From sequence record MK250027.1: a stretch of 64,000 bases of DNA; one strand, 5' to 3'. A model generated the notes under the pieces. That model had not been told where the DNA came from. It saw nothing but the letters and a program-made list of their open reading frames with translations, and did not search any database. A program made the translations under genes and the position numbers. Each line of letters begins with the position of its first letter. Position 1 is the stretch's first letter. Below, one piece after another: positions 7,126 to 62,860 of this stretch.

Positions 7126-7407
7126 TTAAATAGAATAATTAATATTCATAATATCAAAAAGTTGATTAAGATGATCTGTTGTTTGAACTTCTACAGATGC
7201 AACAGTATTATGTTCATCATTATCAATAATACATGTCCAATTTCTTCCTACCATATTTGTTTGTAAATTATGAATAGTTATTGTAAATGTATGATTAAGT
7301 TCTCCTACAGTTTTATAAAAGTAATCTGCTTCATCAAAATCTGCAAAACCTTTATCATGATTATATTCAAATTTATGAAATAAAAGTAAATCCTTTGTAA
7401 TATCCAT
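7126..7407 (-). CDS. Hypothetical protein
   Basis: 93-aa ORF, last gene of the operon under the promoter at 8787. Confidence 0.75.
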   Translation of the reverse strand: MDITKDLLLFHKFEYNHDKGFADFDEADYFYKTVGELNHTFTITIHNLQTNMVGRNWTCIIDNDEHNTVASVEVQTTDHLNQLFDIMNINYSI

Positions 7408-7417
7408 GTTTAATTAT

Positions 7418-8272
7418 TTAATCTTCATCATTTAAATCCTCAAATTCTTCATATGATAATAGTAATTTATCATATTCTTTAATCATTGTAGATAAAATTT
7501 GTTTTTGCTCTGATACATATTGTTTATCAAAATGCCAACATTGTCCTGCATATTTACATGGAATAAACATACCGTTTTGACTTTCTAACATTATACAGAA
7601 TGATGCCCAATTTACAACTGATTCTGAAAGTTCTTTCCAATTTATAGTTGAATTATTATAAAAACTCATAACACCATTCATTTGAGAAAATTGATTCCAA
7701 CAATAATTATATGGCATATAGTCTCTATATTCATCACTATTTAAATCTGTGACAACAAATAGTATACCTCCAGTAAATTCATTAAATACATTATCGCCTA
7801 CACCAATCAATTCCAAACATTTCTTCATCTTTGGAATTTCATATGTCATTGCTTTATATATAGAATATTTCTCATATATAACAGTATATTCATATTTTTC
7901 TGAAGTATGAAATACTGAACACATTTTTGTTATATTTTCAAAAAGTGTTTTAATATTATCTTTTTGTTCTTCATATGAAACATATTTATTATAATCTCGT
8001 AATATCGTAGATATAATATTATTAAATTTCATATTTAATTTTCCCTCTATCATTCGAGTGGTTTCATCCTCTTCATATTCAAAATCATCACTACCTCCAT
8101 ACTCATCCATATATCCTATAACAGGAATATGCATAGGTATTAATGGACTTTCTAAATAAGTAGGATTATTTCCAAGTTTATGCTTATTTCTACGACAAAT
8201 AATAGCAATTACTTTCTCTCTATTCCTTATTGGAATTCTTGAATGAAATCCAGATACACAAAAATCACCCAT
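7418..8272 (-). CDS. Hypothetical protein
   Basis: 284-aa ORF, no TAG. Confidence 0.8.
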   Translation of the reverse strand: MGDFCVSGFHSRIPIRNREKVIAIICRRNKHKLGNNPTYLESPLIPMHIPVIGYMDEYGGSDDFEYEEDETTRMIEGKLNMKFNNIISTILRDYNKYVSYEEQKDNIKTLFENITKMCSVFHTSEKYEYTVIYEKYSIYKAMTYEIPKMKKCLELIGVGDNVFNEFTGGILFVVTDLNSDEYRDYMPYNYCWNQFSQMNGVMSFYNNSTINWKELSESVVNWASFCIMLESQNGMFIPCKYAGQCWHFDKQYVSEQKQILSTMIKEYDKLLLSYEEFEDLNDED

Positions 8273-8275
8273 AAC

Positions 8276-8761
8276 TTATTTTAAATTATTAATATAATCA
8301 GCCATCTTAGTTTTCCAATTGTTTGCCTTTGCAATATGACAAATATAGTTAACTGCATACTCAAAACAATTTTCTAATGTATTCCATGTCATATCAAATG
8401 AATGTGGATTTTCACCAAGAGTTTGTGCAAACTTACTTGAATATATAATATCAAAATACCAATCTTTATGCTCTCTATTATATCCAGGCTCGATAATAAT
8501 ACCAAGATGTTTTTCTAACCAATCAACTGCGTCAAATACAGTAGGTGCTGGAATCCAATTAGGCGACGGATATTCAACTTCCCATTCTTTATCGCGTTGA
8601 CACAGATCTCCAGTATGCCATGTACGTTCAGCAACAGTTTCACCATTCTTTGATTTAACACCTTTAATACCAATTGGTGTATTCATATACAAATCTTCTG
8701 TATATTCATCGAATCCTAATTTATTAAGAATTTGTGAAGATGCAAAATTAATATGTTTCAT
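8276..8761 (-). CDS. Hypothetical protein
   Basis: 161-aa ORF directly downstream of a host-type promoter. Confidence 0.8.
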   Translation of the reverse strand: MKHINFASSQILNKLGFDEYTEDLYMNTPIGIKGVKSKNGETVAERTWHTGDLCQRDKEWEVEYPSPNWIPAPTVFDAVDWLEKHLGIIIEPGYNREHKDWYFDIIYSSKFAQTLGENPHSFDMTWNTLENCFEYAVNYICHIAKANNWKTKMADYINNLK

Positions 8762-8786
8762 AATTATTTTATTTTATATTACATTA

Positions 8787-8794
8787 CAAAGATA
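8787..8794 (-). promoter_or_regulatory. Class I host-type promoter, -7 element TATCTTTG
   Basis: Minus strand reads ATGTATCTTTGTA, matching the Bacteroidota TAnnTTTG consensus, with a T-run about 20 nt upstream. Nine copies in the window. Confidence 0.8.
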
Positions 8795-8820
8795 CATATA
8801 ATTTTGGAATATAAAAAATA

Positions 8821-9261: not shown

Positions 9262-9930
9262 TCAATCTTCAATAATTTTTAAATCATCTGGTATATAACA
9301 ATCACTACCTAAATATTTAATATATTCTTTAACTGGTTTCTTTACTTTTTTCCAATATGGTAAGTTATTATCTTTGCTTTGATAATATATATAACTATCA
9401 AAATATGTTATTTCTTCAATATTTCCATTATGTTCAACTTTACATACTTTATAATTATCTTCATCGAAATAACTTGCAAGATCCATCCATACTAATAAAT
9501 CTTCTAATATCATTATTGACAACGGTGAAGTGTTATATGTATTAGTTTTTTTCTTTTCATATATAATATTTCCATTATTATCTTTCAATACTGTTAATCC
9601 TTTATAATCACCTGTAATTTGCCAATTTGGATTATCAATAAAATATTGTAATAAAAATTCTAATGGTTTTCGCTCTTCTTGAATTATAGAATAATCTATT
9701 GAAAAATTATATTCACTAAACCTTAAATTATCTTCTATACATTGTCGTATGTCTATAGCAAAATGTTGCTTCTAATCATGTGTTAATGTATAATATTCAT
9801 ATTTAGCAATATTTAATGCATGTTGATGTGCGGCTATTGTATGTCTACCAATTGCATATCTATATGACATCCATACTAAATCTTCATGATAACTTTTATC
9901 GAATATATTATCCTAATCTTTTTTCTTCAT
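9262..9930 (-). CDS. Hypothetical protein, 222 aa (two TAG)
   Basis: Track ORF 9262..9588 extends in frame to ATG 9930: MKKKD(TAG)DNIFDKSYHEDLVWMSYRYAIGRHT... Confidence 0.75.
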
Positions 9931-10968: not shown

Positions 10969-11649
10969 TTACTTCTTATATAAAATATTATCAATCATTC
11001 CTTTAGAACCATATGATTTTGCTTCTTCTGCTGTCATCCAAAAATCTCTATCTGCATCAGATTTAATTTTTTTCATTGTTTGCCCAGAATGATTTGCAAT
11101 AATATCATAAAGTTCTGTTTTTAACTTATTTATTTCTTTACATGTAATTTCTATATCACTTGCTTGGGTATGATCTCCAGTAGATGACATAGGTTGGTGA
11201 ATCATTACACGTGAATGTGGTAATGCGTATCTTTTTCCTTCAGTTCCTGCACAAAGTAATATACTAGCCATACTAGCTGCCATACCGGCACATATAGTAG
11301 ATACATCAGACCTTATAAATTGCATTGTATCATATATCTCTAATCCTGAATATACATCACCACCTGGTGAATTAATATAAATAGAAATATCAGTATTATC
11401 TACATTATCAAGATACAATAATTGAGATGTAATAATATTAGCACTTTCTGCTGTTACAGGATTACCTAAGAAAATAATTCTATCCATCATCAATCTTGAG
11501 AATACATCCATTTGTGATACGTTAAGTTGTCGTTCCTCAAGTATAGTAGGATTTTGATAACCCATATTTATACCATTCATATAATCATGTAAGTAAAGAC
11601 TACTTACATTTCTTGAATTCATAAACTTTTCAAAATCAGTTTTAATCAT
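10969..11649 (-). CDS. clpP: Clp protease proteolytic subunit (canonical, host-like)
   Basis: DVFSRLMMDRIIFLG, YINSPGG, AASMAS (Ser), MIHQP (His), DRDFWM (Asp). Confidence 0.95.
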   Translation of the reverse strand: MIKTDFEKFMNSRNVSSLYLHDYMNGINMGYQNPTILEERQLNVSQMDVFSRLMMDRIIFLGNPVTAESANIITSQLLYLDNVDNTDISIYINSPGGDVYSGLEIYDTMQFIRSDVSTICAGMAASMASILLCAGTEGKRYALPHSRVMIHQPMSSTGDHTQASDIEITCKEINKLKTELYDIIANHSGQTMKKIKSDADRDFWMTAEEAKSYGSKGMIDNILYKK

Positions 11650-15879: not shown

Positions 15880-16821
15880 TTACATTGTTCCATCATTAGG
15901 TTGCAAACACATAATTCCACGTTCTCGCCACATCTTAACCACTTTAGAAGAATCTTCCAATACAAACAATACATTATAATAAGGTTCAATATATTCCTTA
16001 TATAAATTATATTTACAATCTGGACCCTTTGTAAAATTCTTCAAAGGTCTCATTAACACCTTATCAACATTACCAATAAGGTTATTCTTCAACCAATCTT
16101 CTGTTGCATGTCTAATATCGTCTGTATCTTCTCTACCTGTCAATATAATGACATCCACTGATTTATCGGCAATATATGTATTAACAAGTTGGCAAAGTTG
16201 CTTACATGGTTTATCATCCCTCATGCTATCAGCAGCACCATTACCATAAAATGGCCGACCTTGAAGATTAAAACAAAGTGTAGCATCCATATCTACAAGA
16301 ATACAATTCTTCTTCGTTTCATCAAACTTCTTAAAGCTATTATATTGCTTATTATTAAGTTGTGTAGCAATAAAGTTTCTATATCGCCTATAAGTAGATT
16401 TGATAACGGATTCACCTATAGGATTAGATCTAAATGAATCTCTTCTAATACATTCCTCTACCGATACATCAAAGAAATCCTTAAATTCCAATGTATAATG
16501 ATACTCATTATGTGTCTCATTATACTTATCAATTCTATCTTGCATTTCTTTCCATCCCTTTGGATTCAGGTTCATATTATCCATAATGATATTCCAACCT
16601 TTTTCCATAGGTGATTTAAAAAATGCATCTGTCATATCTTTAATAACAGAAAGTTTCTCACGTGATTCTACCCAATACTCACCGAACATGTTTCTAAGAG
16701 AATCCCAATTAATTCTAATTCTCTCAGTTGGTTTCTCCTTTACCCAATGTTCAGCGAATGTAGACTTACCAGACGCTTGAATACCTCTTGTCAATATAAT
16801 TACCCTTTCTTTCATATTCAT
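15880..16821 (-). CDS. pseT: Polynucleotide kinase/3'-phosphatase (T4 PseT-like)
   Basis: P-loop GIQASGKST, RINWDSLR, CIRRD; HAD domain ILVDMDATL...LTGR...LEDSSKVVKMWR. Confidence 0.9.
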   Translation of the reverse strand: MNMKERVIILTRGIQASGKSTFAEHWVKEKPTERIRINWDSLRNMFGEYWVESREKLSVIKDMTDAFFKSPMEKGWNIIMDNMNLNPKGWKEMQDRIDKYNETHNEYHYTLEFKDFFDVSVEECIRRDSFRSNPIGESVIKSTYRRYRNFIATQLNNKQYNSFKKFDETKKNCILVDMDATLCFNLQGRPFYGNGAADSMRDDKPCKQLCQLVNTYIADKSVDVIILTGREDTDDIRHATEDWLKNNLIGNVDKVLMRPLKNFTKGPDCKYNLYKEYIEPYYNVLFVLEDSSKVVKMWRERGIMCLQPNDGTM

Positions 16822-17213: not shown

Positions 17214-17903
17214 TTATTTAGATTTTAATCCTAAACAATATTCTTTATTAATATTATCAATAAAAGAATTAATTCTAATTCTTAGTAATTCTGATTCTTC
17301 TTCAAATTCCTTAATTTTATCAATGTCTTTTTTAATATCATCTATATTATGATTTAACAAATATTCATACGTATTAGGTTTAGATACTTTAAAATAATAA
17401 ATATCTTCATTCATAATATTATTATGATTTAAAGCACATAATAAATGATAAGATTCCTCATTTGCAGATGAACCATGATAACCATATCCATCACTTTCAA
17501 AATATATACATAATGGTCCATAACTATAATGTCCACCTGGATATACAGTTGTTCTTAATGAGTTAATATGAAATGATTTACATATATTATATTTCTTATC
17601 TAAATAATCATTCAATAACTTATTAATACTCATCATTTGAAGATCTAATAATCTATCTAAATTTATATCATTATTCTTACTTATATATACACTGGAAACT
17701 TCTTTTACAACTGAATCAATATCTAATTCATAATTCTCGTCTGTATATAAATGAAGAATACAAAGAAATAATCTATGTATATATTCTTTCTTATCGTAAT
17801 TTATATATGCAGTTTTTAATTTTTCTACATAATCATCTGTCACCTTCTTATTGATGTTATATTCGATATTCTTTATAAATTCTTTTTGCTCATTCTATGT
17901 CAT
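17214..17903 (-). CDS. Hypothetical protein, 229 aa (TAG at codon 3)
   Basis: ATG ACA TAG AAT GAG... is in frame with track ORF 17214..17843, which lacks an ATG start. Confidence 0.7.
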
Positions 17904-22199: not shown

Positions 22200-22633
22200 N
22201 NNNNNNNNNNNNNNNNNNNNNNNNNNNNNNNNNNNNNNNNNNNNNNNNNNNNNNNNNNNNNNNNNNNNNNNNNNNNNNNNNNNNNNNNNNNNNNNNNNNN
22301 NNNNNNNNNNNNNNNNNNNNNNNNNNNNNNNNNNNNNNNNNNNNNNNNNNNNNNNNNNNNNNNNNNNNNNNNNNNNNNNNNNNNNNNNNNNNNNNNNNNN
22401 NNNNNNNNNNNNNNNNNNNNNNNNNNNNNNNNNNNNNNNNNNNNNNNNNNNNNNNNNNNNNNNNNNNNNNNNNNNNNNNNNNNNNNNNNNNNNNNNNNNN
22501 NNNNNNNNNNNNNNNNNNNNNNNNNNNNNNNNNNNNNNNNNNNNNNNNNNNNNNNNNNNNNNNNNNNNNNNNNNNNNNNNNNNNNNNNNNNNNNNNNNNN
22601 NNNNNNNNNNNNNNNNNNNNNNNNNNNNNNNNN
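22200..22633. other. Assembly gap
   Basis: 434 N. Confidence 1.
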
Positions 22634-30147: not shown

Positions 30148-31893
30148 TTAGAAATTATCATATGTTTGTTCAAGCATCTTAACATAATCCATATGATAAC
30201 CAAGAGGATGTTCTGATTCATTTACAGGTTTCATAATAGGTTTTTGAGAAACTTTATAACGTTTAACAAATTCTTCATTCATTATACGTTGTGCTTCTCT
30301 ATTTCTAAGACCAGTTTTCTCCCAGAACTCATCAACATCTTGTTTAGTTTCAAGAACCCAATAACGTGCCATATTCTCAATAGCATCTTGCTCTTGAAGA
30401 GAAGCATGTGTGTAAAGTTCAATATCTTTAGGATCAGCTAATCTCAACCAATTCTTAAGGATACGTTTCTCTGCAAGAAGTGGAACATTCCATTGATTGT
30501 TAATATCATCAATCTTATAGATATTATGTTCTACTACATATTTCATACATTTTTTCTTCTATGTAGGTTTAAGAGCCGCAAATTTCGCGAAGTTATCTGG
30601 TGATAATGAAACAGAGAATGGATAACGTGAAATAATCTGTTCTTTAATTGCTTCTTTCTTTTCGAGATTATCAAGAAGATCTTGGAATTCCTCCATATCT
30701 TTATCAGTTTCAGCCGCAATTCTTTCTGCTTTTTCTGTAGATGTTTTTGAATCTTCGTCAGCAGGCACAGAATCTTCTGCATCATCATTAGTTGTATCTG
30801 TATCAGAAACGTCTTCATCTTTTGAATTATCATCTGAATCAGCATCACCATCATCGGCTTTATCCTCATCAGACTATCCTTCTACATCAAGAATATCTGC
30901 ACGTTTTTCGGCTTTCTCATCATCGTCTGTATTTTCATCGGAATCACTATCAGCATCTTCTGATGTAATATCGAGGATTAATGCGCGTTTCTTTTCTTTC
31001 TCATCATCTGTAGGTTCTGATTTTGAATCTTCACTCTTATTATCTTTTGTATCATTATTTTCATCTTTATTATCAGATGAATCGTCAGAACTACTACCAT
31101 CTGGTGTTACGTCTGCTTCTGGTAATTTGAATTCTTCTTCATCTTCTTCAAGTAATGGTTTTGATAAATCTTTCAAATTAACCGGTTTGTTTTTCATTTC
31201 CATACATTTTTCATTTATTGGAGCATCTTGCTCAAGTTCATTGACTGTAACACCTTCCATAAGGACCTTATATTTCTTATTAGTTGTTTCTTTCTCTGAT
31301 TTTTGAGCTGATACTGATTCATTGAGATATGACATAGTATTAACTCCCAATGATTCATTAACCCTATCAAGTTTCGCTTCAGCGAAACCAGGAGTACAAA
31401 CAATATCATATGTGAAAATCTGAGCGATTTCTACCTCATGTGTTTTCTCATCTACATCACCTGCTGCACGAGAAGAAACAAACAATGGATAACCTGCTTC
31501 TACTAATTCCTATGCAATTTTACCATTAGGTGTATCAAGAATTTCAAGTTTACCCATTACATTATGATTTTCCTAATCATACCAAAGGTCTGTAATCTTA
31601 TGTGAAGCTTCCTTTAACTAAATATCAAAACGTCCTTCAGGATGATCCAATTCACCAAGAATTGAACCACTTTCCTTAATCATCTCTCGTAAATATCCAA
31701 GGTGACGTAAAACTTCTTTTTCTGGATAACTTCTATTATTACGGTTAATTACAACATGACCAGGAACAGAACATGCAGTAAATACACCGGAGAATATATA
31801 TTTCTTATTATTTGGTGTACTGTCAAGAGACTCGTTAAGCGTAAGAGGCTACAATGACTTACTTTTTATCATTAACTTATTACTTTTTGTCAT
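30148..31893 (-). CDS. T4 gp21-like prohead protease with acidic linker and C-terminal domain, 581 aa (six TAG)
   Basis: Read-through joins an untracked N-terminus (INRNNRSY, LGELDHP, ASHKI, DTPNG, VSSRAAG, DIVCTPGF) to track ORFs 30874..31485, 30559..30768 and 30148..30546, all in one frame. Confidence 0.85.
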
Positions 31894-33287: not shown

Positions 33288-34763
33288 TTAACTATATTTT
33301 ATTTTATATTTTTTAATTTCAGATGGAACAGTATATAAGAATTTTATAAATTCATCTAACGTCCATTCTGCATATGAATCAAATTCGTCTTCATTAATAT
33401 CCAAACTTAATAATTCTCTATTAACATAATAATCAATATTTGATTTATCTATTATTAAATTATCATTTAACCATAAATCATTAATAACTTTATTCTTTAT
33501 TAATAATTTTATATTTGGATAATTTTTACCTTTATTATCTGTATCATTCATTGTAACACTATCGCATACTTCATATAATAATTCAAATTCTCTGAATGTT
33601 AATACATCAATAGACATACAATCATCATTATCATATGTGTCACTATCTTGACCATCCAAATATATAACATCTTCTAATGGGAAATAATAATCATTATCAT
33701 TTAAATTCTATATTTCATCATCAACAATAACATTATAAATTTTTGCATAATTTCCATTTGGATCACCATAACCATAATCAAATTCACCAACATCAAATGT
33801 TAATGTTCCTCTATCATATCCTAATTTTAGAAAATCCCATGAATTTAATAATCTTCCAGAATTTCCCTTATTACTCATAGGTGTACCTTTATCAAAAAAT
33901 GCAATATTATTCATGTTATATTTTCTTAAATCTATACATGAAAAATCCTAATCAAATGAACCACATAGAAATAACATATTCTTAAATGATTTTACACTAT
34001 TCATATTCCATTTCTATATAGGTTGATTAAACTTCTTACATAAACTAAACATGTTATCCATACATTCTACTTTTGATACATCCCAATTACTAATATCCTA
34101 ATTAAATAGTTCACAGTTATTAAACATATCGGTCATGTCAAGAGCATTCTCAGTATTCCATTTAGTTATATCACCATTAAATTTCCTACATGTATCAAAC
34201 ATACCTATAAAAAATTCAACATTATGAACGTCCCAATTACTTATACCATTATTACCATCATATTCTTTACAGTAAATAAACATGTTTGTCATTGTACATA
34301 CATTAGATGTATTCCATTTACTAAGATCACATATCTATATCTAATTGCCAAATACTTGTTTCATTCTTGTTACATGTGCAGTATTCCAATCCTCTACATG
34401 CCAAAATATAGGATACTTATCTCCCATCTATGGTTTGAACTAAAGTAAATAATCCAATTTCTTTACATTACGTATATCAATCCAATTAAGATTAAATTCA
34501 TGTATATCATCTTTAAATAACTAAGGTTTAATCTTATTATAAATTAAATCATGTAATTCATTATAATCCGCAACTTTATATTGAAACTATGGTGTTAATA
34601 CTAATTCTAGATCATCATCAGATACAGTAAAACCATTCTTTAACTTATTTAATATATTATCGACATCTCGACCTATTAATATATCACTATGATCAATTTC
34701 ATTATCAAATATATCGTCATCATCAAATAATGATTCCATTAAATTATATATATATTTCTTCAT
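33288..34763 (-). CDS. DUF285/BspA-like repeat protein, 491 aa (many TAG)
   Basis: Joins 34098..34292, 33708..33914 and 33288..33659. Repeats NLNWIDI, KWNTSNV, FN(TAG)DISNWDVSKV, FNQPI(TAG)KWN. Confidence 0.85.
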
Positions 34764-42422: not shown

Positions 42423-43973
42423 TTATGTAATTTCTTTTCGTTTTTCAAGTATATGTTTTAATATTTCATATTCTGTATTCGCTATTTTCTTATCCATTTT
42501 TGCTGCTTTACGCAATGCAAAATAATGTGTAAGAATCGCAGGAACAACAGCATTTGGATCTTTTTTATAAACTGCGCCAGAACATGTTTTAATCTCATCA
42601 GATTTTGGGATATAATTCTTATCTTTGAATAAGAATGATTCAGGAGAAATTTGAAATTGTCTCATTATAGATGGATATAGTGACGCGAAATCTAATCCAC
42701 CTATATATTTAAATATTCCTGGTCTAGTTGGCCACACAAAAGCTCCAACATATTGATTATCAGTTAGTTCTGTGTTTTTATTAAATGGTTTTTCTGGTAT
42801 TACCTTATAATTTGGGTACACAAAGTTACACATAACAACATGTGTTGGTTGAATTGTAGAGAATGCGACATTTAGTTCAAGTCTCAATTCACATGCGAGC
42901 ATATACCAAATTTCAGCAGTCTTTAAGAATCTGTCTATATGTTCAACCAATATGGTATCGATGCAGTTATAGAAAACATATTCTTTGAAATGTTCTTCGA
43001 AGAATTCTTTGAATCCCCACGGGTGATTTACCTTCTTGATACCTAACGCTTTTTCTGCGACAAAATCAAGTGTATTATTTTCTTTTGGTTGGATAGTCAT
43101 GTCCCATGTTTTATAAACCAATAAGTAGTCATAAATTATTTTATGCATAGGGACTTTCACATTGATTGTTTTACCACCGGATCTTGGAGTAATCTTAAAG
43201 TTTGTGAATGTTCTTGTAGGAGAAATTCTTTCAATATCAATATTATTGATTTTACATCTATTATAGATATATAACCAGTCGAATCCTAGAAAATTCCATC
43301 CAGACATTGCAGGAATTGGTTCGATGAATGTTATATAGTCTTCAAGCATTTCCCGTTCTGTTGGAAAAAATCTGAATTCAAATTTATATCCTTTTGTAAT
43401 ATCTGATCCATTGTTTTCCTATGAATACTTATCGATTTGTTCTTGGACCCATTGTTGTTCTTCTAATGTTAAGTCTTTACGTGACCAAATGATAGTCCTA
43501 GGAAATTGTGTCATTGATATAGTATTGATACGAGTTGACGCTTCTTCTGGATCTGGAAATCCTTCATCTGAAACTTCTGTCTCAATATCACACCACCATG
43601 TTGGAGGAATATTCATTTCAAACAGAGGATCAACTGCATGTCCAAATGAATTAAGAATTTCATTTATTCTTAATTCAGGAAGTTTATCAACAGGATGCCT
43701 ACGAACCCATTTATTATCATAAGATTTCCATTGGTGCATAACAGGTGAACCGTCTGGATTAAACTTATAACATTTGTTTACAAAATCATATTCTTGAAAT
43801 GGAGGATCTGCATTTTGTCTGTTTGTATATTTCCATTCGAACATTGATTCTTTAGGAACAGGATATTGAAGGAATTTAACTTGTCCTTGTTTATCTATAT
43901 ATGATACTATTAATTTCTTTGTCGGTGTGCCATCAGGCAATAAATAATCTACCTATTCTTTATTAATTATCAT
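42423..43973 (-). CDS. polB: Family B DNA polymerase, N-terminal piece (exonuclease plus motif A), 516 aa (two TAG)
   Basis: Joins 43419..43940 and 42423..43349. WWCDIET (ExoI), GWNFLGFDW (ExoII), YNCID (ExoIII), DFASLYPSIM (motif A). Ends with TAA in the fingers helix. Confidence 0.9.
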
Positions 43974-43998: not shown

Positions 43999-44607
43999 TT
44001 AAATTATTTTAGATATTATCTTTAATTTAAGAGCTTCTTCTGAAGTAAGAATCCAATCTTTCTTTCTTGAATAATTATCCTCAAGTTCTTTTCTTGTTAT
44101 TGCTGTTTCTTCAATGATTAATTTATATATCATTTCAGTAAGTCTCTTCGCTTCTTTAACATCATCTTCTAAATCTGCTGTTTTCCCGATTGCAACAGAA
44201 GATGCTTGATGAATTAAGAATGTTGTATTCTTGGTCGCGAATCTTTGTTCATAAGGAACAGAAAGAAGAATACAAATACCTGTAGACATACATGCGCCAG
44301 TTGCAGTGATATTTGTCTTGCAATGATTATTAAGCATTATTAACATATCATGAATTGCATAACCTTGATAACATGTTCCTCCATATGTGTCTAACCATAC
44401 ATTAACATCTGGTATTTTAATTTCTTCTTTTATATTATGACCGAAAAATTCTTTTAATGCTTTTTTATTCTCATCAATTATATTATTATCCCCTGTAATT
44501 AAATTAGTTACCCATTTAATAATATCATCTGATGTTTTTTCATCAATATCTTCTGTAATATATAAATTTCTCTTTGTTACATCAAATGTCTACAATTTAT
44601 TTTCCAT
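43999..44607 (-). CDS. clpP: Second, divergent ClpP-family protease, 202 aa (TAG at codon 6)
   Basis: WLDTYGG...ACMST (Ser)...FLIHQA (His)...KDWILTSEEAL; read-through N-terminus to ATG 44607. Confidence 0.85.
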
Positions 44608-48452: not shown

Positions 48453-49058
48453 ATGAAATACGTTACTGCAAAAGAAGCAAAGAAATATTTTTAGATTTCA
48501 GGGTAGACACTAAAAACGTGGAAAGATTCTAATAAAATCTTAACGAAACAATTTTCATACAAGAAGATTTTGTATGATATTGATTCTGTAAATAATGATA
48601 ATGTTAATTTAAATAATAGAAAAAACGTAATATATGCACGAGTTTCATGTAGTAATTAGAAATAGTCATTAGATAATCAGATAGAATTAATTAAATCATA
48701 TATGATTTCTAATGGTATTAAAGTGGATGATATATATTCAGAAATTGCTTCTGGACTAAATGAAAATAGGAAAGAATTATCTAGATTAATTCATGATATA
48801 GATAATGAATAGATTAATACTGTATATATATCATTTAAAGATAGACTAACTAGATTTGGATTTAATTATTTTAAATCAATGTTTGAAAATCATGGAACTA
48901 AAATAATTATATTAGACGAAAATGAAGAAACAAATAAAGATTATAAAACAGAATTAGTTGAAGATTTAATATCTATTATACATCATTATTCTACTAAATT
49001 ATATTCAAATAGAAGGAAAGAATTGAAAGAAATAGAAAAAATTATAAAAAATGAATAA
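48453..49058 (+). CDS. tnpA: IS607-family serine transposase, 201 aa (five TAG; absent from track)
   Basis: N-terminal HTH (TAKEAKKYF..ISG.TLKTW), IYARVSCSN(TAG)K(TAG)SLDNQ, SEIASGLN, KDRLTRFGF, ELVEDLISII. Confidence 0.9.
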
Positions 49059-49107
49059 TTTTTAAAATAATTTAGATAAATATTATAAAGATTATAAAAG
49101 TTATAAA

Positions 49108-50457
49108 ATGCAAGTATTGAAGATTAAATATCAAACAGATGATTAGTCATTAGATATTATACAGGATTATATGAGACAATATAGTTCTGTATAGCATTTT
49201 GTATATAATAGAAATCAAGAAGGTAAATCATAGAAAGATATAAAATAGCAACTTAAATCTTTAAATAATGTAGATTTATTAGATAGTTGGTTTATTCAAT
49301 GTTCTTTCTATGATATTCCAAATAAAAATAATGTAATATTTGGTGGAAAGAAAAATTACTTTTAGAGATTAAAGAATAATATTACTAAAGAACAATTTAA
49401 ATAGAAACGATTATCAGCTATATATTCAATAGGTGAAGTAGTTAATAAATCAGTTAAAGGAAACAGAAAATTTCATATAGAACAAGATTTAGAAAATATT
49501 ACTTTCAAACCTAATAAATCTACTAAAATAAATTTACAACTTATAGGACTAAATAAACGTAAATAGATTCTATCAAAACTTTATTAGAAACAAGAACAAA
49601 AAGAAATAAAGATAGCTTATAAGTTAGACTTAGAATATGTTTATATAATATTTGATGAAACTAATATTTATAATTATAAAACTAAATTTATAAAGAATAG
49701 AGTTCTCTCATTGGATTTGAATCCTAATTATATAGGATGGAGTATTGTTAATTGGAAATCAGAATCAGAATTTGATGTAGTTAAATCTGGTATTTATTCT
49801 ATTAAAAAGTTAAATGATAAAGATTTTAATTTAAAGAATAAAGGGTATAGTTCTGAATCTAATGAAAGAAAATATATAAGTAATAAACGTAATTTTGAGA
49901 CTATATAGATAGTAAAGAATTTAATTAATAAAGCAATATATTATAAATGTCAATTAATTTCTATTGAAGATTTAAATATTAAATCAAGTGATAAAGTGTT
50001 TGGTAAGAGATTTAACAAGTTAGTTAATAATTCATGGTGTAGGAATACATTTGTAAATAATTTAATTAAACGATGTAATATATTCAATATAAAGTTATTA
50101 AAAGTTAAACCGGAATATAGCTCATTTATTGGTAACTTTTTATACCGTTCATTAAATTTACCTGATATGGTATTAGCGTCAATAGAAATTGGACGTAGAG
50201 GATATGAGTTTTATAATCAATATATAAGTAAAACTAAAGAGATAAAAAAGAATATAATTCAACCTGATTTAAATATGTATCAAAGGTTGTACCTTAAGTC
50301 ATTGGAAGAATTTAAGTTACAACCTACATACAAGGATTTGATTGGACTATATTACTTCTTCAAAAAGTCGAAACTTAAATATCGACTTTCTACAGATTAG
50401 TTTAATCTGTAGTTTTACAGATTTTATTCAAATGTAAGTTTAATTACATTTATATAA
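49108..50457 (+). CDS. tnpB: TnpB-related RuvC nuclease lacking the Zn finger, 449 aa (eleven TAG)
   Basis: VLSLDLNP (RuvC-I), ISIEDL (RuvC-II), PEYSSFIGN...PDMVLASIEIGRR (RuvC-III); joins 49711..49908 and 49996..50400. Confidence 0.85.
50371..50441 (+). ncRNA. Candidate omega/reRNA scaffold overlapping the tnpB 3' end
   Basis: Perfect hairpin CTACAGATTA-GTT-TAATCTGTAG nested in AAACTTA/TAAGTTT, at the position expected for TnpB guide scaffolds. Confidence 0.45.
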
Positions 50458-54432: not shown

Positions 54433-54731
54433 ACTAAATTATTATGTTCATTTTCATAATTCTTTTCATTATAACAACACTCATCGAATTTTTTCACTTT
54501 TTCTATATATTCATCTATAATATCAATACCTAAATATTTTGCATATATTATTTTTGCATCTGATATATCACATTTATCATTCATTGTAATACAATTAACA
54601 TTATTATTCAATGCAAAGTATATATCTTTATATGTTGATATTATTTGTTTTAGAAAATATTTTAATAACGTATTATGTTTCTTAAACATATTATTCCTTA
54701 TAATCCTTATTTTTGAACGATAATATATCAT
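54426..54731 (-). CDS. Hypothetical protein, possibly N-terminal fragment of the degenerate endonuclease
   Basis: 101-aa ORF overlapping both neighbours. Confidence 0.45.
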   Translation of the reverse strand: MIYYRSKIRIIRNNMFKKHNTLLKYFLKQIISTYKDIYFALNNNVNCITMNDKCDISDAKIIYAKYLGIDIIDEYIEKVKKFDECCYNEKNYENEHNNLVW

Positions 54732-55846
54732 ATTTCAGTTATATCATTTAATTGATCTTTATTATTAATCATCTATATAAGTGATTTTATAGTTCCTTTC
54801 TTATCATTTTTATATGTAGATTCCCAAACTATTATAACCTTGCAATTCAATGTCTGTTGAATATCTTCAATTCTTTCTCTATCATGATTCCATTTATCTT
54901 TAACTGAACGTCCGTTTCTTAATATAAAATAATTTGTTTCATTAGCATTATATTTCTTTGGATTAAAATGATAAAAATCTCCATAAAATTCTATAACAAT
55001 ATTTAATGATTTATCGTAATAATCTACATGATAAAAATTATTATTTAATAACTTAACTGTATATTCTATATAAGTATCATTATCTTTATAATATTCTTTT
55101 AAATGAGAAAATAACTCTAATGATATATTTGACTTATTACCTATTAAATAATATTGTTCTGAACGTTTTTCTACAAATTCATTATATTTTTGTGTTCCAT
55201 CTTCTTTACCGTATTCTTCGATAAAATAATCTAATGTACATGTATATCTCTGACGTTCGATATAAGCATTCCATATTTTTAAACCATCTATTTCACCATG
55301 TCTTTTAATAAGATTTTCCTTTGTTACCGCTCTAGATTTATTGTATTCATCAAATTTATCTTGAGACATACCATATTTTTCATGTTTATATTCATATGTA
55401 TTTGTAACTGATTGTTTATTACAATATGAATTCCATTTTTCTAATCCTATATCTTTTCCATATCGTTTAATCATTTTTTCTTTGGTAACACATTGTCTTT
55501 CTTTTGCTACAGGGTTGAAATCCTTATCAGGTACTCCAAATCCATACTACGTATATTTTGCAGCTTTATGCGCAAATTTAAATTTTACATCTTTAAAATT
55601 TGGAAATTTCTTGCATACACAATCATAACACCTACATAAATGATATTCATTACCATTATAATTTCTAGTACTTAAAAATGATAACTTATTATTATCACAT
55701 ACTATTTTATGTGTTTTTGAGTTTATATGAAATGTACCATTATCATATATAAGAAATTTACCACATTCTTTACAATAACATATTGATGGATCTATATTAT
55801 TATCTTTACAATATTGAACTACGTTCTATTCACTTAAATATTTCAT
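54728..55846 (-). CDS. Free-standing Vsr-like homing endonuclease, 372 aa (three TAG)
   Basis: ATG overlaps the TAA of the Pol N-intein gene. Cys motifs, KYG repeats, HVDYYDK...IVIEFYGDFYH...IIVWE. Confidence 0.8.
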
Positions 55847-58406: not shown

Positions 58407-58430
58407 TTTAAATTTATATACATTCTCTTT
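58392..58430. terminator. Bidirectional terminator between convergent endonuclease genes
   Basis: AAAGAGAATGTATA/TATACATTCTCTTT. Confidence 0.75.
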
Positions 58431-59634
58431 TATTATTTTCTAAATATTCATTTATTATAGTTTTTATTATTTCTATCTTATTGCTCCATATAGGAAGATA
58501 ATTCAGATTATTCATTTTCGCAGTTTGACATTTAAAAGGATCAATGATTGACCAAACATTTACAGCAGATTTATATTGTTTTGATATTTCTGCTTTTTGT
58601 TTCCACTTATTTAATAAATCAATATCATCTTTATTATCTTCATCAAATAAATGTTTCCCATGTGTCCAAAATGCGTTTATCTCTATAAATAAATCTAATG
58701 GTTTTATATAGAAATCTACATGGAATGGATAACGCTCATCAACATTTACATTAAACTATATATCATCTTTATCAAATATTGTTTGTAAATATTCATATGT
58801 TTGATATTCTGGTTTTGACATACCAAAATTATCTTTATATTTTTTCTTTATTGTTTTTACATATTGATCAAACTAATATTGATGAAAATTTTCTAATGAA
58901 CCATATTTTTTAATAACAGTTTCTTTTGTCTTTTCTTTATTATTAAATGTTGGATCCCCATATAATTCTAATTTTGTTTCTTTAATTTTGTTTTTTATTT
59001 CTTCATTTTTTGCAGGGTTATCAACGCCATATTTTTTAATAACAGTTTCTCTTGATTTTTCTTTATTATTATCTGACTAAAAACTATATTTACACCCATA
59101 TTTTTTTAAACATGTATTAATTGATTTCTATTTAACTTCTTCATTCTATCCTGAAAATTCTACANNNNNNNNNNNNNNNNNNNNNNNNNNTGTCTTCTAT
59201 AAATATTCCGATGTTTTTGTATATGATGAAACTCCATATTTTTCTAAACATGTTTGTTTTATTTTATCTTTAACTGATTTTAACTACATTTGATGTTCAA
59301 CACCATATCGTTCTTTTAATGTATTTTTTATTTTATTCTATACATTAACTGAATTCATTACACATCGTGAATTTGAACAAAATTTACGAAATCCTCTACT
59401 ATAACAATTAAATCTCACAGGTTTCCCACATGTTTCACATACTGGTCTTATTTCTATTTTATTTACAATACGGTATATTGTCTCCTATATAGATTCGCTA
59501 TCATTATATCTATTAATTAAATAATCATAAATATCTTGATGTTTATTTAACCAAGATAATCTTGTATAATTTTTTGCTAACTAATTCTTTTTTGTTATAA
59601 ATTTTTCTTTTATGTAGTCATCATTAATAATCAT
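58414..59634 (-). CDS. Vsr-like homing endonuclease with KYG repeats (many TAG; spans a 26-N gap; absent from track)
   Basis: YLINRYNDSESI(TAG)ETIYRI, CETC, TCLEKYGV repeats, YPFHVDFYIK...FIEINAFWTH...AKMNNLNYLPIW. Confidence 0.8.
59165..59190. other. Assembly gap
   Basis: 26 N inside the KYG repeat region. Confidence 1.
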
Positions 59635-59675
59635 ATCTAATAATAAATTATTATTATTTTTAATTATATAAAAAA

Positions 59676-59718
59676 TGAGGTAAATAGTTTTTAACAGAAT
59701 TAAAACTATTTACCTCAT
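59676..59718. terminator. Terminator after the RecA C-terminal gene
   Basis: 17-bp inverted repeat ATGAGGTAAATAGTTTT/AAAACTATTTACCTCAT. Confidence 0.75.
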
Positions 59719-59725
59719 TAATATA

Positions 59726-60463
59726 TTAATTAATACTTGCTTCTTTTATAGGATCTTCATCATTATCATTTTCATCTGAAATACCCATTGTTTCCTCTAA
59801 ATCTTTAACATCATCAAATGCAGATTGATCTGGTAATTGGAACATTGGGTGAATAACATGCTCATTTATATAATCAAGATATTCTGGTGTAAATACCTTA
59901 TCAGACCAAAATTCAGTAAAAGGAACTTGTTCATTAAGATGTTTTACTACAATATACCTTGCTGTATCTTTCGGTAAACAATAATGTGTTTCACCATCAT
60001 CTGTTGTCCATGTATATACTTTCTTTTTATCTGAATCTGATAATTTATCATATTCTTTTTGCGTAAGTAAATTTCCTCTACAAACACCTGAATTGTCCCA
60101 TGTCATAAATTGTTCCAAACCAACATATGGGTTAGGTTTTTTAAAATATGGAATTTGAAATTTCACTTTAATTGGTCTGCAAAAACGAGACTTAACTGGT
60201 TTTGCTGTAACTAAAACACCATTCTTTGTACCTGCATCAGAACCTTGTCTTGATTTTGCAGCTGAATCATTCTCTTTATCTTCCAGTTTAGCAGCACTTA
60301 ATTCAATTGTAATTGATGCATTATATACAATACCTGAATTATGATTTATAATACCATTTGCAGAAACATAATTATGTGTGTCTTTAACTGTTAAATCTAT
60401 TACATCCTCACTTAATTCTGACTATATCTTCTTTACAATCTTTAACTTTCTATATTTCATCAT
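59726..60463 (-). CDS. uvsX: RecA/UvsX C-terminal piece fused to a 42-aa C-intein (TAG at codon 14)
   Basis: MMKYRKLKIVKKI(TAG)SELSEDVIDLTVKDTHNYVSANGIINHN|SGIVYNASITIEL...KSRF, in frame with track ORF 59726..60166. Confidence 0.9.
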
Positions 60464-61790
60464 TTATATATTGCGTTATTTTTTTATATTCTAAATATTT
60501 AAAAACTGTTTCTGAAATTCTAACAATACCTAATACATTATTATCTATTAATAAAATATCATTATCTCTTTGCTTATCCAATTCTTCCTAATGAAATACA
60601 CCTTGTCCACCATCATATTCAAATATAATTATTTTACCTTTATATTCTAAATACCCATCACATGCATAAAATATTTTATTTCGTGTTTTATCTGATATTT
60701 CATCTGGAATTATTACTATATATGGTTTATGAATGATTTTCTTATCGATATATTTTTGTAAAAATTCAAAACATCTATTTTCTGATTCTGATATATTTGT
60801 CATCCAGCCACCTTTTATTTTACATAAAAAGTTATCACTATGTTTCCAATTTTTCCAAATATTTTTTGCTAAATTTGATTGTAATTCTTTTTTCTTTAAA
60901 TAATCTTCATATGATTTATAACCTTTATATTCCTCACATGATGGATTAATTTCATGCACTTTTAATTTAGCTTCATCATCAGAATATCCTAACTTCTTCC
61001 AATAATTAAACGTCCATACACTATGTTCTTTTGCATAATATGAAGCTTTCTTTTTTGCATCCTCTATAGTTAGCCCTAAATTTAACCAATATTTTGTTGT
61101 GCTTTTAGAACATGTTGAATTATTCTATTGAACTTTACTTACTTCTATTTTTGCGTCTTCTAATGTATAACCTTTATTTAACCAATATTCAACACAACGC
61201 GGTGATCTATTTTTATTTAATTCTCGTATAATTGATTCTGCTTCAGTATCACTATATCCTCGTGCTAAATAAAACGATTTACTACTTTTAATATATCCTT
61301 TATTCTACTTATCAGGATAATATTGTTTACACCAAATCATTAACTAATCATTAATATCTCGTTCTGTTATAAAATCAGAAAATGTTATGAAATTTATAAA
61401 TCTTTTAATAAAAGAAATATTATTCAAATTAAATGAATATTTATTATCTTTAATGAATGAATTAAATATATCATCTTTATTAAAATATACAACTGTCTTT
61501 TTATACTTATTTAATATAATTTTTTTATATTCATCAAATGAATATCCTCTAACATCCCAATATAAAAATGTTGTATTTTTATGTTTATTTGTAATATTCT
61601 TTAAATAATTTAATAATATATCTATTATTTCTTGAGAGCCATATACTTTATTTTCGCTAAATAACTATTGTAACTTATTAATATACTATGTATTATTTGT
61701 ATTAATATTAAAATTATAAAACTTATTATATTTGTTTATAAACTATATAAACTCATTTATATCAAATACATTTATTTCTACTTTTTTCAT
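60408..61790 (-). CDS. Free-standing Vsr-like homing endonuclease, about 460 aa (many TAG)
   Basis: Read-through ORF with YW-x-x-KGY repeats and CDGYL...IFEYDGG...FH; overlaps the C-intein start and ends in TGA. Confidence 0.8.
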
Positions 61791-61885
61791 ATTAAACATT
61801 TCAAATTTTTGATTATTTTATACCTTATAATATTTATTCATATATAAAGTAAAAATAATCAAAAATTAAAAAATATTTTATGGTA

Positions 61886-62860
61886 TTATTCAGAAATTGC
61901 ATAAATTTCATCATTTTCATTTAATTCTGAAACTATTTTCCATGAGCTATCCAACTCTGGTTTATCAGGATTAATAAGAAATCTATGTGTATTTGAACAT
62001 GTAATAGTCTCTCCATTATCAAATGTAAATGTATATGTCGGTTTTTTAAAATGCCAAAGTTTCTCTACATCATGATATTCACCATCATGTGACAATACTT
62101 TATCTCCAACAACAACATCTTTCATTTGTTTAATTCCATTATTTGTAATAATTTTTTCATCTGGTCGTAAACAACCCATTGCTTGTATATTCTGAGGAAT
62201 AAATGACATAGATTGATATACATGGTTCACTACAATCCAAGGAATTTGCAATTTTGCAATTGGAGTAGCACAAACTCTAAACATTGCTTTAGTATCTTTT
62301 GCTTTTGTAAAATCTGCTTTTTGTGAACCTGACAATGTATCTTCACGTTCCTTTTCAGATGTTAAATTTCCGAGAGAATCCAATACAATAATAACTTTAT
62401 CATGTTGACCATACTTATCTTGTTGTTCTTGCAATTTATCACATAAATTTGCAATAAATTGGCTTGTCTCCATAATTGTATTAACTTTTTTAATAATTAA
62501 TTTAGATGGATCTACTCCAAGACGCCTAACAAAATCAGAATCTATTGCACCTTCAGAATCAAGATAAATTGGAATATAACCTAATTTTTGAGCTTCCCTA
62601 CAACATGAACATGCTAAAAAAGATTTACCAGCGCCAGATGTACCCGAGAACGTTACAACTCTACCAGTCGGTATTGCTTTATAAATATCACCTGAACAAC
62701 ATGCATTTAAAATATAATTACCTGTTGAAATCCATTCTTTTATATTTGAATACGCTGAATCTGCAATAATTTCAGCTTGATCATCTATACTACTTACCAT
62801 TGACATTAATGAACCAATACCACCTTCAAAATCTTCGCTTGACTACTTTTTCTTTGCCAT
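61886..62860 (-). CDS. uvsX: RecA/UvsX N-terminal piece fused to a 95-aa N-intein (TAG at codon 6)
   Basis: ISTGNYILN, GTSGAGKS (Walker A), YLDSE, IVLDS (Walker B), VNHVY, QAMG|CLRPDEKI...TCSNTHRF, TAA stop. Confidence 0.92.

What the first reader, a model, noticed from the sequence alone, without database searches (positions are those of the whole stretch)
7126..62860. Stratified TAG use: none in host-promoter genes, a gate at codons 3-7 in several middle genes, dense in late and mobile genes
Seen: intact genes directly after class I promoters (8761, 13469 and its operon including clpP, pseT, 25854, 28347, 38117, 45931) have no TAG. UvsX-N (codon 6), ClpP2 (codon 6) and 17903 (codon 3) have their only TAG there; PolB-N (codon 7) and 9930 (codon 6) have one more. 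Tape measure, prohead protease, DUF285, tnpA/tnpB and most endonucleases have many. Known: recoded stops were proposed to time late/lysis expression. Inference: an N-terminal TAG is a switch that blocks replication and recombination proteins until the suppressor system is active. Alternative: relaxed, A-rich 5' ends.
Basis: partly seen in the sequence, partly recalled or inferred. Interest (0 to 1): 0.68.

Follow-up and report, generated by a model that had tools for sequence, protein, structure and literature searches.

The report
Early amber codons gate phage genes
In this giant gut phage, which reads the stop codon TAG as glutamine, genes that use TAG only once or twice put it at their very beginning, which may act as a cheap lock keeping replication and capsid proteins off until the phage has switched the cell's genetic code.

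Summary
The window is Prevotella megaphage Lak-B8 (positions 468001-532000), a known TAG-to-Gln recoded phage. Genes behind a host-type promoter motif (TGTATCTTTG; 9 in the window, 56 in the genome) have no internal TAG. UvsX-N, ClpP2 and the 17903 gene have one TAG each, at codons 6, 6 and 3. PolB-N and the 9930 gene have one early TAG plus one more. Prohead protease, DUF285 and IS607 genes have many. Tiered TAG use is already published. The early placement appears to be new, and it is real across the genome. In genes that are rich in Gln but poor in TAG, 35% of TAGs lie in the first 5% of the gene, against 0-14% for every other codon. The set also includes gp32, Mre11, FEN, a helicase, Hsp90 and the major capsid protein. 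About half of the raw excess may come from start-codon miscalls, but a filtered test still gives 8 observed against about 2.4 expected. AT-rich 5' ends do not explain it. Conservation is mixed: UvsX and PolB keep the TAG, ClpP2 and 17903 do not, and three genes move it but keep one. A translational lock is the best reading, but it is unproven; passive tolerance of the cheapest position remains a rival.

The parts
61886..62860 (-). UvsX N-part fused to an intein N-splicing domain. Its only TAG is codon 6 (62843-62845).
   Evidence: Pfam RecA 1e-12 plus Hint/Intein. The TAG is kept in Lak-A1, C1, G003 and G002. The MAKK start is kept in non-recoded relatives.
59726..60463 (-). Intein C-splicing region plus UvsX C-part. 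Its only TAG is codon 14 (60422-60424).
   Evidence: Pfam Intein_splicing C-end. It passes the filtered N-terminal test. No ortholog with this split exists in A1/C1.
43999..44607 (-). ClpP2. Its only TAG is codon 6 (44590-44592).
   Evidence: Pfam CLP_protease 4e-23. The aligned codon is CAA in A1/C1/G003, so it codes Gln and is specific to the B lineage.
42423..43973 (-). PolB N-part (exonuclease plus the start of the polymerase domain). TAG at codon 7 (43953-43955) and codon 185.
   Evidence: Pfam DNA_pol_B_exo1 and DNA_pol_B. The codon 7 TAG is kept in A1, C1 and G003. The downstream TTG is TTA there, so the first ATG is the start.
17214..17903 (-). Gene of unknown function. Its only TAG is codon 3 (17895-17897).
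   Evidence: The ATG at 17903 is kept in A1/C1 (the ATG at 17909 is ATA there). The TAG is TAT there. No family hit.
9262..9930 (-). Gene of unknown function. TAG at codon 6 (9913-9915) and codon 53.
   Evidence: A1/C1/G003 carry their only TAG at codon 4 instead. The G002 homolog has an N-terminus of the same length without TAG.
54728..55846 (-). ORF next to the PolB intein. TAG at codons 7, 100 and 358.
   Evidence: phrog_22677 3e-48. The TAG is kept in C1/G003 and sits at codon 11 in A1.
62988..64000 (-). gp32-like ssDNA-binding protein. Its start (64124) and its only TAG (codon 21) lie just beyond the window end.
   Evidence: Pfam gp32. The TAG is kept in A1, C1 and G003 and aligns to Gln in G004.
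8787..8796 (-). Class I (host-type) promoter core TGTATCTTTG. The same motif sits at 13506-13515, 15006-15015, 16842-16851, 25885-25894, 28384-28393, 38146-38155, 42233-42242 and 45967-45976.
   Evidence: Exact 10-mer, 56 times in the genome, at -70 to -30 from the ATG, 12-fold enriched. It fits the Bacteroidetes -7 TAnnTTTG consensus (from my own knowledge).
10969..11649 (-). ClpP, TAG-free, in the operon behind the class I promoter at 13515.
   Evidence: Pfam CLP_protease 6e-71. 0 TAG against 8 CAA/CAG.
15880..16821 (-). Polynucleotide kinase/phosphatase (pseT-like), TAG-free, behind the class I promoter at 16851.
   Evidence: Pfam HAD_PNKP 3e-25 and AAA_33.
30148..31893 (-). Prohead core protease, 6 TAG.
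   Evidence: Pfam Peptidase_S77 1e-14. A late-type ATAAATA motif lies upstream.
33288..34763 (-). DUF285 repeat protein, 10 TAG.
   Evidence: Pfam DUF285 2e-61.
48453..50457 (+). IS607-type element: tnpA (48453-49058, 5 TAG) and a probable tnpB (49108-50457, 11 TAG).
   Evidence: NCBIfam IS607 transposase 1e-50. The neighbour has only a weak TnpB N-domain hit.
60408..61799 (-). ORF between the two UvsX/intein halves, 8 TAG, no family hit.
22200..22633 (.). Masked run of 434 N, lying between ORFs.
   Evidence: The length is exact, judged by constant offsets. Content not looked up.
59165..59190 (.). Masked run of 26 N inside the open frame 58414-59634 (-).
   Evidence: The same register is open on both sides. 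TAG count is a lower bound.

Best explanation
Lak-B8 reads TAG as Gln only after it has changed the translation machinery of its standard-code Prevotella host. The tools for that are a Gln-like tRNA with anticodon CUA and a phage RF2, which does not read TAG. TAG use comes in three tiers.

Tier 0: genes transcribed from host-type promoters. They have no TAG, so they can be translated at once.

Tier 1: about 25 Gln-rich genes with only one or two TAGs, and that TAG is usually the first Gln codon, within codons 3-30. In the window these are UvsX-N, UvsX-C, ClpP2, PolB-N and the 17903, 9930 and 55846 genes. Elsewhere they include gp32, Mre11, FEN/RNase H, a helicase, Hsp90 and the major capsid protein.

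Tier 2: structural, mobile-element and endonuclease genes, where TAG makes up 30-80% of Gln codons.

Proposed working (inferred). While host RF1 wins at TAG, ribosomes on a tier 1 message stop after a few codons and release a tiny peptide. No protein is made, almost nothing is wasted, and no long truncated fragment appears. Once tRNA-CUA is charged and abundant, one TAG costs only the unsuppressed fraction of the yield. A gene with n TAGs yields roughly p to the power n, so it needs near-complete suppression. The number of TAGs would then set a threshold, and an early first TAG makes the lock cheap.

Shown here: the tiers, the positional bias, that the TAGs lie in coding sequence, and that the switch machinery is present. 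Inferred: the timing, and that the lock is adaptive.
For: - TAG means Gln: internal TAGs are CAA or CAG in 25% of Lak-A1/C1 orthologs. The tRNA-CUA has U1-A72, G2 and G3 like the phage's own tRNA-Gln genes. The RF2-like gene (SPY, GGQ) is TAG-free.
- Tier 0: 56 class I motifs. The first genes behind them hold about 200 CAA/CAG and no internal TAG.
- TAG share per gene is bimodal: 357 TAG-free genes against 153 expected.
- Positional bias: 12 of 34 sparse TAGs lie in the first 5% of gene length, against 0-14% for the 40 other codons tested.
- The N-terminal 29-codon block holds the lone TAG in 13 genes, against 0-4 in control blocks. Lak-A1, C1 and G003 show the same.
- The filtered test gives 8 observed against about 1 artefact plus 1.4 background, P=0.003.
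- The first Gln codon is TAG in 32/60 genes with 1-2 TAGs (12 expected) and 39/59 genes with 3-6 TAGs (28 expected).
- The early TAG lies inside known domains or conserved N-termini in UvsX, Mre11, FEN, the helicase, Hsp90, gp32 and the capsid protein.
- An early TAG is present in both lineages in 12 of 16 genes. In three of these (9930, 55846, 81045) it has moved to another codon.
- No gene behind a class I promoter has an N-terminal-only TAG: 0 of 44.
Against: - There are no RNA, ribosome or protein data, and no RNA run holds the stretch.
- The exact TAG codon is no better conserved than its neighbours: 9/16, against 0.65 whole-codon and 0.78 four-fold-site identity in codons 2-40 of the same genes.
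- ClpP2, the 17903 gene and the helicase have the TAG only in the B lineage.
- The capsid protein and ten other genes of this tier sit behind a late-type promoter motif, where a second lock looks redundant.
- Lak-A1, C1 and G003 are close to each other, so there are in effect only two lineages.
- An unrelated code-15 phage (phAss-1) shows only a weak form of the bias.
- The suppressor tRNA has no class I promoter directly upstream, and its timing is unknown.
- My gene calls are simple (the first start codon after a stop).
Confidence: 0.5

Rival explanations
1. Passive tolerance, not a switch. Suppression is never complete, so every TAG costs yield and produces a truncated product. The waste and toxicity grow with the length of the aborted chain, and early terminations can sometimes be rescued by re-initiation. 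So selection purges TAG least near the start. In highly expressed genes the only TAGs that survive are the earliest ones.
For: - Column-level conservation of the early TAGs is not above background.
- The early TAGs come and go between lineages (ClpP2, the 17903 gene, the helicase).
- Late-promoter genes such as the capsid protein also carry one, where a timer seems unnecessary.
- The bias fades gradually from sparse to TAG-rich genes (z 6.8, 3.0, 1.2).
- UvsX, 9930 and 77514 have in-frame ATGs shortly after the TAG.
Against: - Loss of full-length protein does not depend on where the TAG sits. If yield mattered most, early TAGs should be purged as well.
- In three of seven genes that lost the aligned TAG, the other lineage holds a new N-terminal TAG, against a base rate of about 10% (my arithmetic gives P of about 0.03).
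- In Mre11, FEN and the capsid gene no start codon follows the TAG, so re-initiation cannot rescue them.
- In the UvsX of the divergent G002 there are two TAGs in the first 10 codons.
Confidence: 0.3
2. Start-codon artefact. The true start lies downstream of the TAG. Reading TAG as sense merely extends the ORF upstream to a chance ATG, which makes a false early TAG.
For: - Decoy frames give this pattern in 4.7% of genes, about 6 of 126 eligible, with TAG at codons 4-20.
- Clear cases exist: 19138-19518 in the window and genome genes 47718 and 181550, where orthologs have TAA or frame shifts.
- 77514 and 399123 are ambiguous.
Against: - After requiring no start codon within 12 codons of the TAG, 8 are observed against about 1 expected.
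- Domain or N-terminus homology places the TAG inside the protein for UvsX, PolB, ClpP2, Mre11, FEN, the helicase, Hsp90, gp32 and the capsid protein.
- Orthologs have CAA or CAG at the aligned codon in ClpP2 and the helicase.
Confidence: 0.07
3. Composition or rare-codon ramp. 5' ends prefer A/T-rich or rare codons, and TAG is simply one of them.
For: - AAA is strongly enriched at codons 2-6.
- ATA shows a mild early bias of 14%.
Against: - TAG and CAA have the same AT content.
- The pooled TAG share of Gln codons is flat along genes: 25.5%, 32% and 26%.
- The CAG share is unchanged with position.
- Among sparse codons TAG is the single outlier: 35% against a median of about 5%.
Confidence: 0.03

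Closest known systems
Stop-codon recoding as a timer of late and lytic genes in Lak, crAss-like and other gut phages (Devoto 2019, PMC6784885; Borges 2021 preprint, 10.1101/2021.08.26.457843)
   Same: This is the same phage clade. TAG means Gln, and there is a suppressor tRNA-CUA and a phage RF2. TAG is absent from large parts of the genome and frequent in structural regions. The idea that recoded genes cannot be made before the code change is theirs.
   Different: Those papers describe which genes or regions use TAG, not where in the gene it sits. A text search found no mention of N-terminal placement. Here a third tier appears, with a single TAG at the first Gln codon, and it includes the major capsid protein, which is otherwise TAG-free.
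Amber conditional-lethal mutants of T4 and lambda grown on suppressor hosts (textbook knowledge)
   Same: An essential phage protein is made only when an amber suppressor tRNA is present.
   Different: Those are laboratory mutations at arbitrary positions. Here the codons are natural, the phage brings its own suppressor, and the codons cluster at the start of the gene.
N-terminal rare-codon enrichment, or 'ramp', in bacterial genes (my own knowledge: Tuller 2010; Goodman 2013)
   Same: A codon that is rare within the gene is concentrated in the first tens of codons.
   Different: In Lak-B8 no other sparse codon behaves this way. TAG is also a stop, not merely a slow codon, until the suppressor acts.
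T4 late promoter TATAAATA and Bacteroidetes -7 element TAnnTTTG (my own knowledge)
   Same: Lak-B8 has [AG]ATAAATA fixed at -40 to -31 from the ATG of 127 mostly TAG-rich genes. It has TATCTTTG in front of TAG-free genes.
   Different: No transcription data. No -33 TTTG partner is evident. The factors that would read these motifs were not sought.

Membership tests
Lak megaphage, code 15 (TAG=Gln) with its own code-switch machinery | Sequence identity to a Lak genome | tested here: met
   100% identity over 20 kb to MK250027.1.
Lak megaphage, code 15 (TAG=Gln) with its own code-switch machinery | In-frame TAG at Gln positions of conserved genes | tested here: met
   Interior TAG aligns to CAA/CAG in 25% of orthologous codons. 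Examples are ClpP2, the helicase and the second TAG of UvsX.
Lak megaphage, code 15 (TAG=Gln) with its own code-switch machinery | Suppressor tRNA with anticodon CUA | tested here: met
   Record 415017-415088, outside the window. It has Gln-like acceptor features. There is no tRNA in the window.
Lak megaphage, code 15 (TAG=Gln) with its own code-switch machinery | Phage release factor 2 | tested here: met
   PCRF 1e-49 at record 291973-293109. It has SPY and GGQ motifs and no TAG.
Lak megaphage, code 15 (TAG=Gln) with its own code-switch machinery | Host uses the standard code | not testable with these tools
   Taken from Devoto 2019 and Borges 2021.
Recoding as temporal regulator (Borges model) | Early genes readable in the standard code | tested here: met
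   0 internal TAG in the first genes behind 56 host-type motifs. 'Early' itself is inferred from the motif.
Recoding as temporal regulator (Borges model) | Structural and lysis genes use the recoded codon heavily | tested here: inconclusive
   Prohead protease has 6 and DUF285 has 10. Genes behind the late motif use TAG for 36% of Gln codons. But the major capsid protein has a single TAG at codon 11, and 21 late-motif genes have none.
Recoding as temporal regulator (Borges model) | Protein output follows the code switch in time | not testable with these tools
   No RNA run holds the stretch. There is no culture.
N-terminal nonsense codon as translational lock (proposed here) | The TAG lies inside the coding sequence | tested here: met
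   Exceptions noted: 19138-19518, 77514, 181550.
N-terminal nonsense codon as translational lock (proposed here) | Early position beyond chance, beyond start-call artefact, and specific to TAG | tested here: met
N-terminal nonsense codon as translational lock (proposed here) | Maintained by selection | tested here: inconclusive
   The same codon is kept in 9/16 genes, which is not above background. An early TAG is present in both lineages in 12/16, with three relocations.
Bacteroidetes primary-sigma promoter | -7 TAnnTTTG with a -33 TTTG partner | tested here: inconclusive
   TATCTTTG fits the -7 element. No clear -33 TTTG appears in the aligned upstream sequences. Function not tested.

The most novel reading that the evidence does not exclude
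A 'first Gln codon is TAG' rule. A code-switching phage uses one amber codon in the first few codons as a cheap translational lock, one that can shift position over time, on its replication, recombination, chaperone/protease and capsid genes. The number of TAGs per gene then sets the level of suppression needed, so the state of the genetic code itself works as a graded clock for the infection.
Probability: 0.4. Interest if true: 0.75.

Novelty: new variant of a known kind. Interest (0 to 1): 0.6.

Why it matters
Stop-codon recoding in gut phages has been proposed as a timer for late genes, but only from which genes carry the recoded codon. A positional rule turns that idea into something testable with a short reporter: the first 30 codons, TAG against CAA, with and without the phage tRNA. 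The rule is a solitary TAG at the first Gln codon of genes that otherwise avoid TAG. It also suggests that the count of recoded codons tunes the order of expression. On the practical side, gene callers that trim starts to the first ATG after a TAG will mis-annotate the N-termini of core genes in these phages. If the pattern is instead passive, it gives a measure of how incomplete natural amber suppression is during infection.

Tried and rejected
1. A 'middle' promoter of TATAAT type, seen by eye before UvsX, ClpP2, Hsp90, RF2 and the tRNA-CUA. [AG]AGTATAAT occurs 54 times against about 68 expected from composition, and is mostly not upstream of genes. TATAATA has only a weak positional peak. 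Dropped.
2. Sequence context of the TAG. The base after it and the codon before it do not differ between solitary early TAGs and TAGs of rich genes.
3. Excess conservation of the exact early TAG codon. Not found.
4. First-gene-in-operon enrichment. Odds ratio 2.2, P=0.07, not significant.
5. Generality. The partial Lak-like contig G002 has counts no higher than its decoy rate. The unrelated code-15 phage phAss-1 (OQ749652, 44.5% GC) shows N block 8 against 3, 1, 3, and TAG is not an outlier among its codons. The pattern is weak there. My simple gene caller is also less reliable at that GC.
6. G004 and G005, GC-richer relatives, show TAG near gene ends, so they probably use TAG as a stop. I used them only as non-recoded outgroups for N-termini.
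7. RNA evidence. No RNA run holds the stretch.
8. PHROGs and NCBIfam gave no names for most TAG-rich ORFs.
I rebuilt the genome from the public record around the window, leaving the N runs as N.

Full report
WHAT THE WINDOW IS. The window is 100% identical to Prevotella phage Lak-B8 (MK250027.1, 551,627 bp, baboon faeces). Window base 1 is record base 468001. Lak phages are published as TAG-to-Gln (code 15) phages with a tRNA-CUA and a release factor 2, and with TAG absent from large parts of the genome but frequent in structural regions (Devoto 2019; Borges 2021). The genome itself shows the code, so reading TAG as Gln is justified:
- Coverage by long ORFs nearly doubles when TAG is read as sense.
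- Interior TAGs align to CAA or CAG in 25% of orthologous codons in Lak-A1/C1.

THE N RUNS (TESTED FIRST). The offset of 468000 holds at three places: at the window start (an ORF of 1989 aa runs across the junction), between the two runs, and at the window end (the gp32 ORF runs into record base 532001). The runs therefore stand for exactly 434 and 26 letters. The first lies between ORFs. The second lies inside the frame 58414-59634 (-), which is open in the same register on both sides. I did not fetch or infer the masked letters. Of Lak-B8 only the record outside the window was taken, and TAG counts at these two places are lower bounds. Whole genomes of other Lak species were fetched for statistics. 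The stretches matching the N runs were not read or aligned.

THE OBSERVATION.
- The class I promoter is a striking exact motif, TGTATCTTTG, preceded by a hairpin and a T run. It lies about 30-60 nt before the ATG. There are 9 copies in the window and 56 in the genome.
- The first genes behind these motifs hold about 200 CAA/CAG and no internal TAG. The core TATCTTTG fits the Bacteroidetes -7 element TAnnTTTG (my own knowledge), so 'host-type, early' is a reasonable inference, though untested.
- clpP and the pseT-like kinase/phosphatase are confirmed and TAG-free.
- TAG-rich genes are confirmed for the prohead protease (6), DUF285 (10), IS607 tnpA (5) and its neighbour (11, only weakly TnpB-like).
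- TAG share per gene is bimodal genome-wide. 357 of 571 genes have none (153 expected). Of the 218 genes with at least 8 Gln codons, 74 have none, 17 have under 10%, and the rest spread over 10-80%, most of them between 30 and 80%.

IS THE EARLY TAG REAL CODING SEQUENCE? The obvious trap is that reading TAG as sense lets an ORF run upstream to a chance ATG.
- I measured this with decoy frames. It happens in 4.7% of genes, with the TAG at codons 4-20. So about half of the raw excess could be artefact.
- Some cases are artefacts: 19138-19518 in the window, and genome genes 47718 and 181550.
  - UvsX starts MAKK in all Lak lineages and in two GC-richer relatives that lack the TAG.
  - The only alternative start of PolB-N (a TTG) is TTA in A1/C1.
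  - The ClpP2 TAG is CAA in A1/C1/G003.
  - In the 17903 gene the ATG is conserved and the TAG is TAT in A1/C1.
  - The 9930 gene has conserved residues upstream of the next ATG, and a G002 homolog has an N-terminus of equal length.

IS IT MORE THAN CHANCE? I rebuilt the genome and called 571 genes.
- Pooled over all genes there is no N-terminal excess. TAG is 25.5%, 32% and 26% of Gln codons at codons 2-10, 11-30 and beyond 30.
- The signal is in TAG-poor genes. Among genes whose remainder is TAG-free and holds at least 5 Gln codons, 13 carry a TAG in codons 2-30. Later 29-codon blocks carry 4, 0, 1, 0, and the C-terminal block 2. Lak-A1, C1 and G003 show the same.
- With an objective filter (no start codon within 12 codons after the TAG), 8 are observed against about 1 artefact plus 1.4 background, P=0.003.
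- In 25 Gln-rich, TAG-sparse genes, 12 of 34 TAGs lie in the first 5% of the gene. The same statistic for 40 other codons ranges from 0 to 14%. This rejects the 'relaxed, A-rich 5' end' alternative.
The first Gln codon is TAG in 32/60 genes with 1-2 TAGs (12 expected; perhaps 10 of the 32 are artefacts). It is TAG in 39/59 genes with 3-6 TAGs (28 expected) and in 42/71 with 7 or more (37 expected).

WHICH GENES. The set is wider than the window and is coherent:

| Gene | Codon of early TAG |
|---|---|
| UvsX-N | 6 |
| UvsX-C | 14 |
| PolB-N | 7 |
| ClpP2 | 6 |
| Mre11/gp47-like nuclease | 9 |
| Hsp90 | 11 |
| Major capsid protein gp23 | 11 |
| gp32 | 21 |
| FEN/RNase H | 28 |
| SF2 helicase | 30 |

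Several unknown genes join them. In Mre11, FEN and the helicase the TAG lies at or inside the Pfam domain. In Hsp90, gp32 and the helicase it aligns with a Gln that is conserved in the family or in non-recoded relatives.

PROMOTER CLASSES. Besides class I there is a second clear motif, [AG]ATAAATA, fixed at -40 to -31 from the ATG of 127 genes. In those genes TAG makes up 36% of Gln codons. It resembles the T4 late promoter (my own knowledge).
- Genes whose only TAGs are N-terminal are never behind class I (0 of 44).
- They are enriched for the late-type motif compared with TAG-free genes: 10/23 against 21/184, P=4e-4.
- I could not define a 'middle' promoter. So 'middle genes' is not established. 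The tier is better described as 'not early'.

CONSERVATION. The evidence is mixed.
- The same-column TAG is kept between the B lineage and the A/C/G003 lineage in UvsX, PolB, the capsid protein, Mre11, Hsp90, FEN, gp32 and two others: 9 of 16.
- That is no more than the 0.65 whole-codon identity of the same regions.
- ClpP2 (CAA), the helicase (CAG) and the 17903 gene (TAT) carry the TAG only in the B lineage.
- In three genes the aligned TAG is lost but another N-terminal TAG is present in the other lineage. The 9930 gene has codon 6 in B8 and codon 4 in the others. The 55846 gene has codon 7 in B8 and codon 11 in A1. The 81045 gene has codon 19 in B8 and codons 30 and 37 in the others.
- The divergent G002 UvsX has TAGs at codons 5 and 10.
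- Overall an early TAG is present in both lineages in 12/16 genes. This suggests selection, or a gene-specific tolerance, for having an early TAG, but it is not conclusive.

MECHANISM. The facts established here:
- A Gln-like tRNA-CUA sits at record 415017-415088.
- A TAG-free RF2-like gene is present.
- TAA (502) and TGA (69) are the stop codons in use.

From the standard-code termination of the host (literature), a TAG at codons 3-30 must abort translation until the suppressor competes with RF1. That costs a very short peptide rather than a long fragment.

The best reading is a cheap translational lock plus a graded threshold set by TAG number (confidence about 0.5). The main rival is passive survival of TAGs where they are least costly (about 0.3). 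Start artefact (0.07) and composition (0.03) are minor. One further inference is untested: early termination could also shut off downstream genes of an operon by polarity (ClpP2 is followed directly by PolB-N).

NOVELTY. Tiered TAG use, the suppressor tRNA and RF2 are already published for Lak. The positional rule, and the fact that the capsid protein and the T4-like replication and recombination core are otherwise TAG-free but carry one early TAG, were not found in the two primary papers searched or in two further searches.

Noticed in passing
window 59726-62860 (-): UvsX is interrupted in Lak-B8 but not in Lak-A1/C1, where the protein is 430-431 aa. UvsX-N ends in an intein N-splicing domain followed by a stop. 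Next comes a 463-aa ORF with 8 TAGs, then an ORF that begins with an intein C-splicing motif and continues as UvsX-C. It looks like a split or decayed intein with a nested ORF. Both halves carry a solitary early TAG.
   Followed up: partly
window 42423-43973, 52906-53880, 55846-56658 (all -): PolB is in pieces that are out of order and more than 10 kb apart. The N-part holds the exonuclease and the start of the polymerase domain. A middle part is fused to an intein N-domain (55846-56658). An ORF at 52906-53880 starts with an intein C-motif. Class I promoter genes lie in between.
   Followed up: partly
window 15006-15015 and 42233-42242 (-): Two class I promoter motifs have no ORF of 50 aa or more directly downstream. 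14116-15005 is empty, and the gene nearest the second motif starts 500 nt away. These could be small RNAs, very short genes or decayed genes.
   Followed up: no
L016:16509-16581 (record 346509-346580): A tRNA with anticodon UUA, which would read TAA, although TAA ends 502 of 571 called genes. Devoto 2019 mentions 'multiple types of suppressor tRNAs'.
   Followed up: no
record about 291800-291900, just upstream of the RF2 gene (L014): A stretch with a tRNA-like T-arm and an ACCA-like end, followed by a terminator hairpin. It was not called as a tRNA by the family search. It could be a tmRNA-like or tRNA-like element.
   Followed up: no
genome-wide, for example window 31925-31935 upstream of the prohead protease: The motif [AG]ATAAATA is fixed at -40 to -31 from the ATG of 127 genes, most of them TAG-rich. 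It resembles the T4 late promoter TATAAATA.
   Followed up: partly
record 201886-202293 and 282761-283114 (class I genes), and three others: In five genes the only TAG lies within the last 8 codons, in one case directly before the TAA. TAG may still act as the real stop of some early genes, with read-through adding a few residues after the code switch.
   Followed up: no
window 48453-50457 (+): An IS607-type element (tnpA 1e-50 and a probable tnpB) uses TAG as a sense codon 16 times. So this mobile element is adapted to the phage's code and could not be expressed in an uninfected host.
   Followed up: partly
L002:4828-6831 (record 54828-56831): The gp23-like major capsid protein has 26 CAA/CAG and a single TAG at codon 11. 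That TAG is kept in A1, C1 and G003 and lies in an N-terminal extension that the non-recoded relative G005 lacks.
   Followed up: partly
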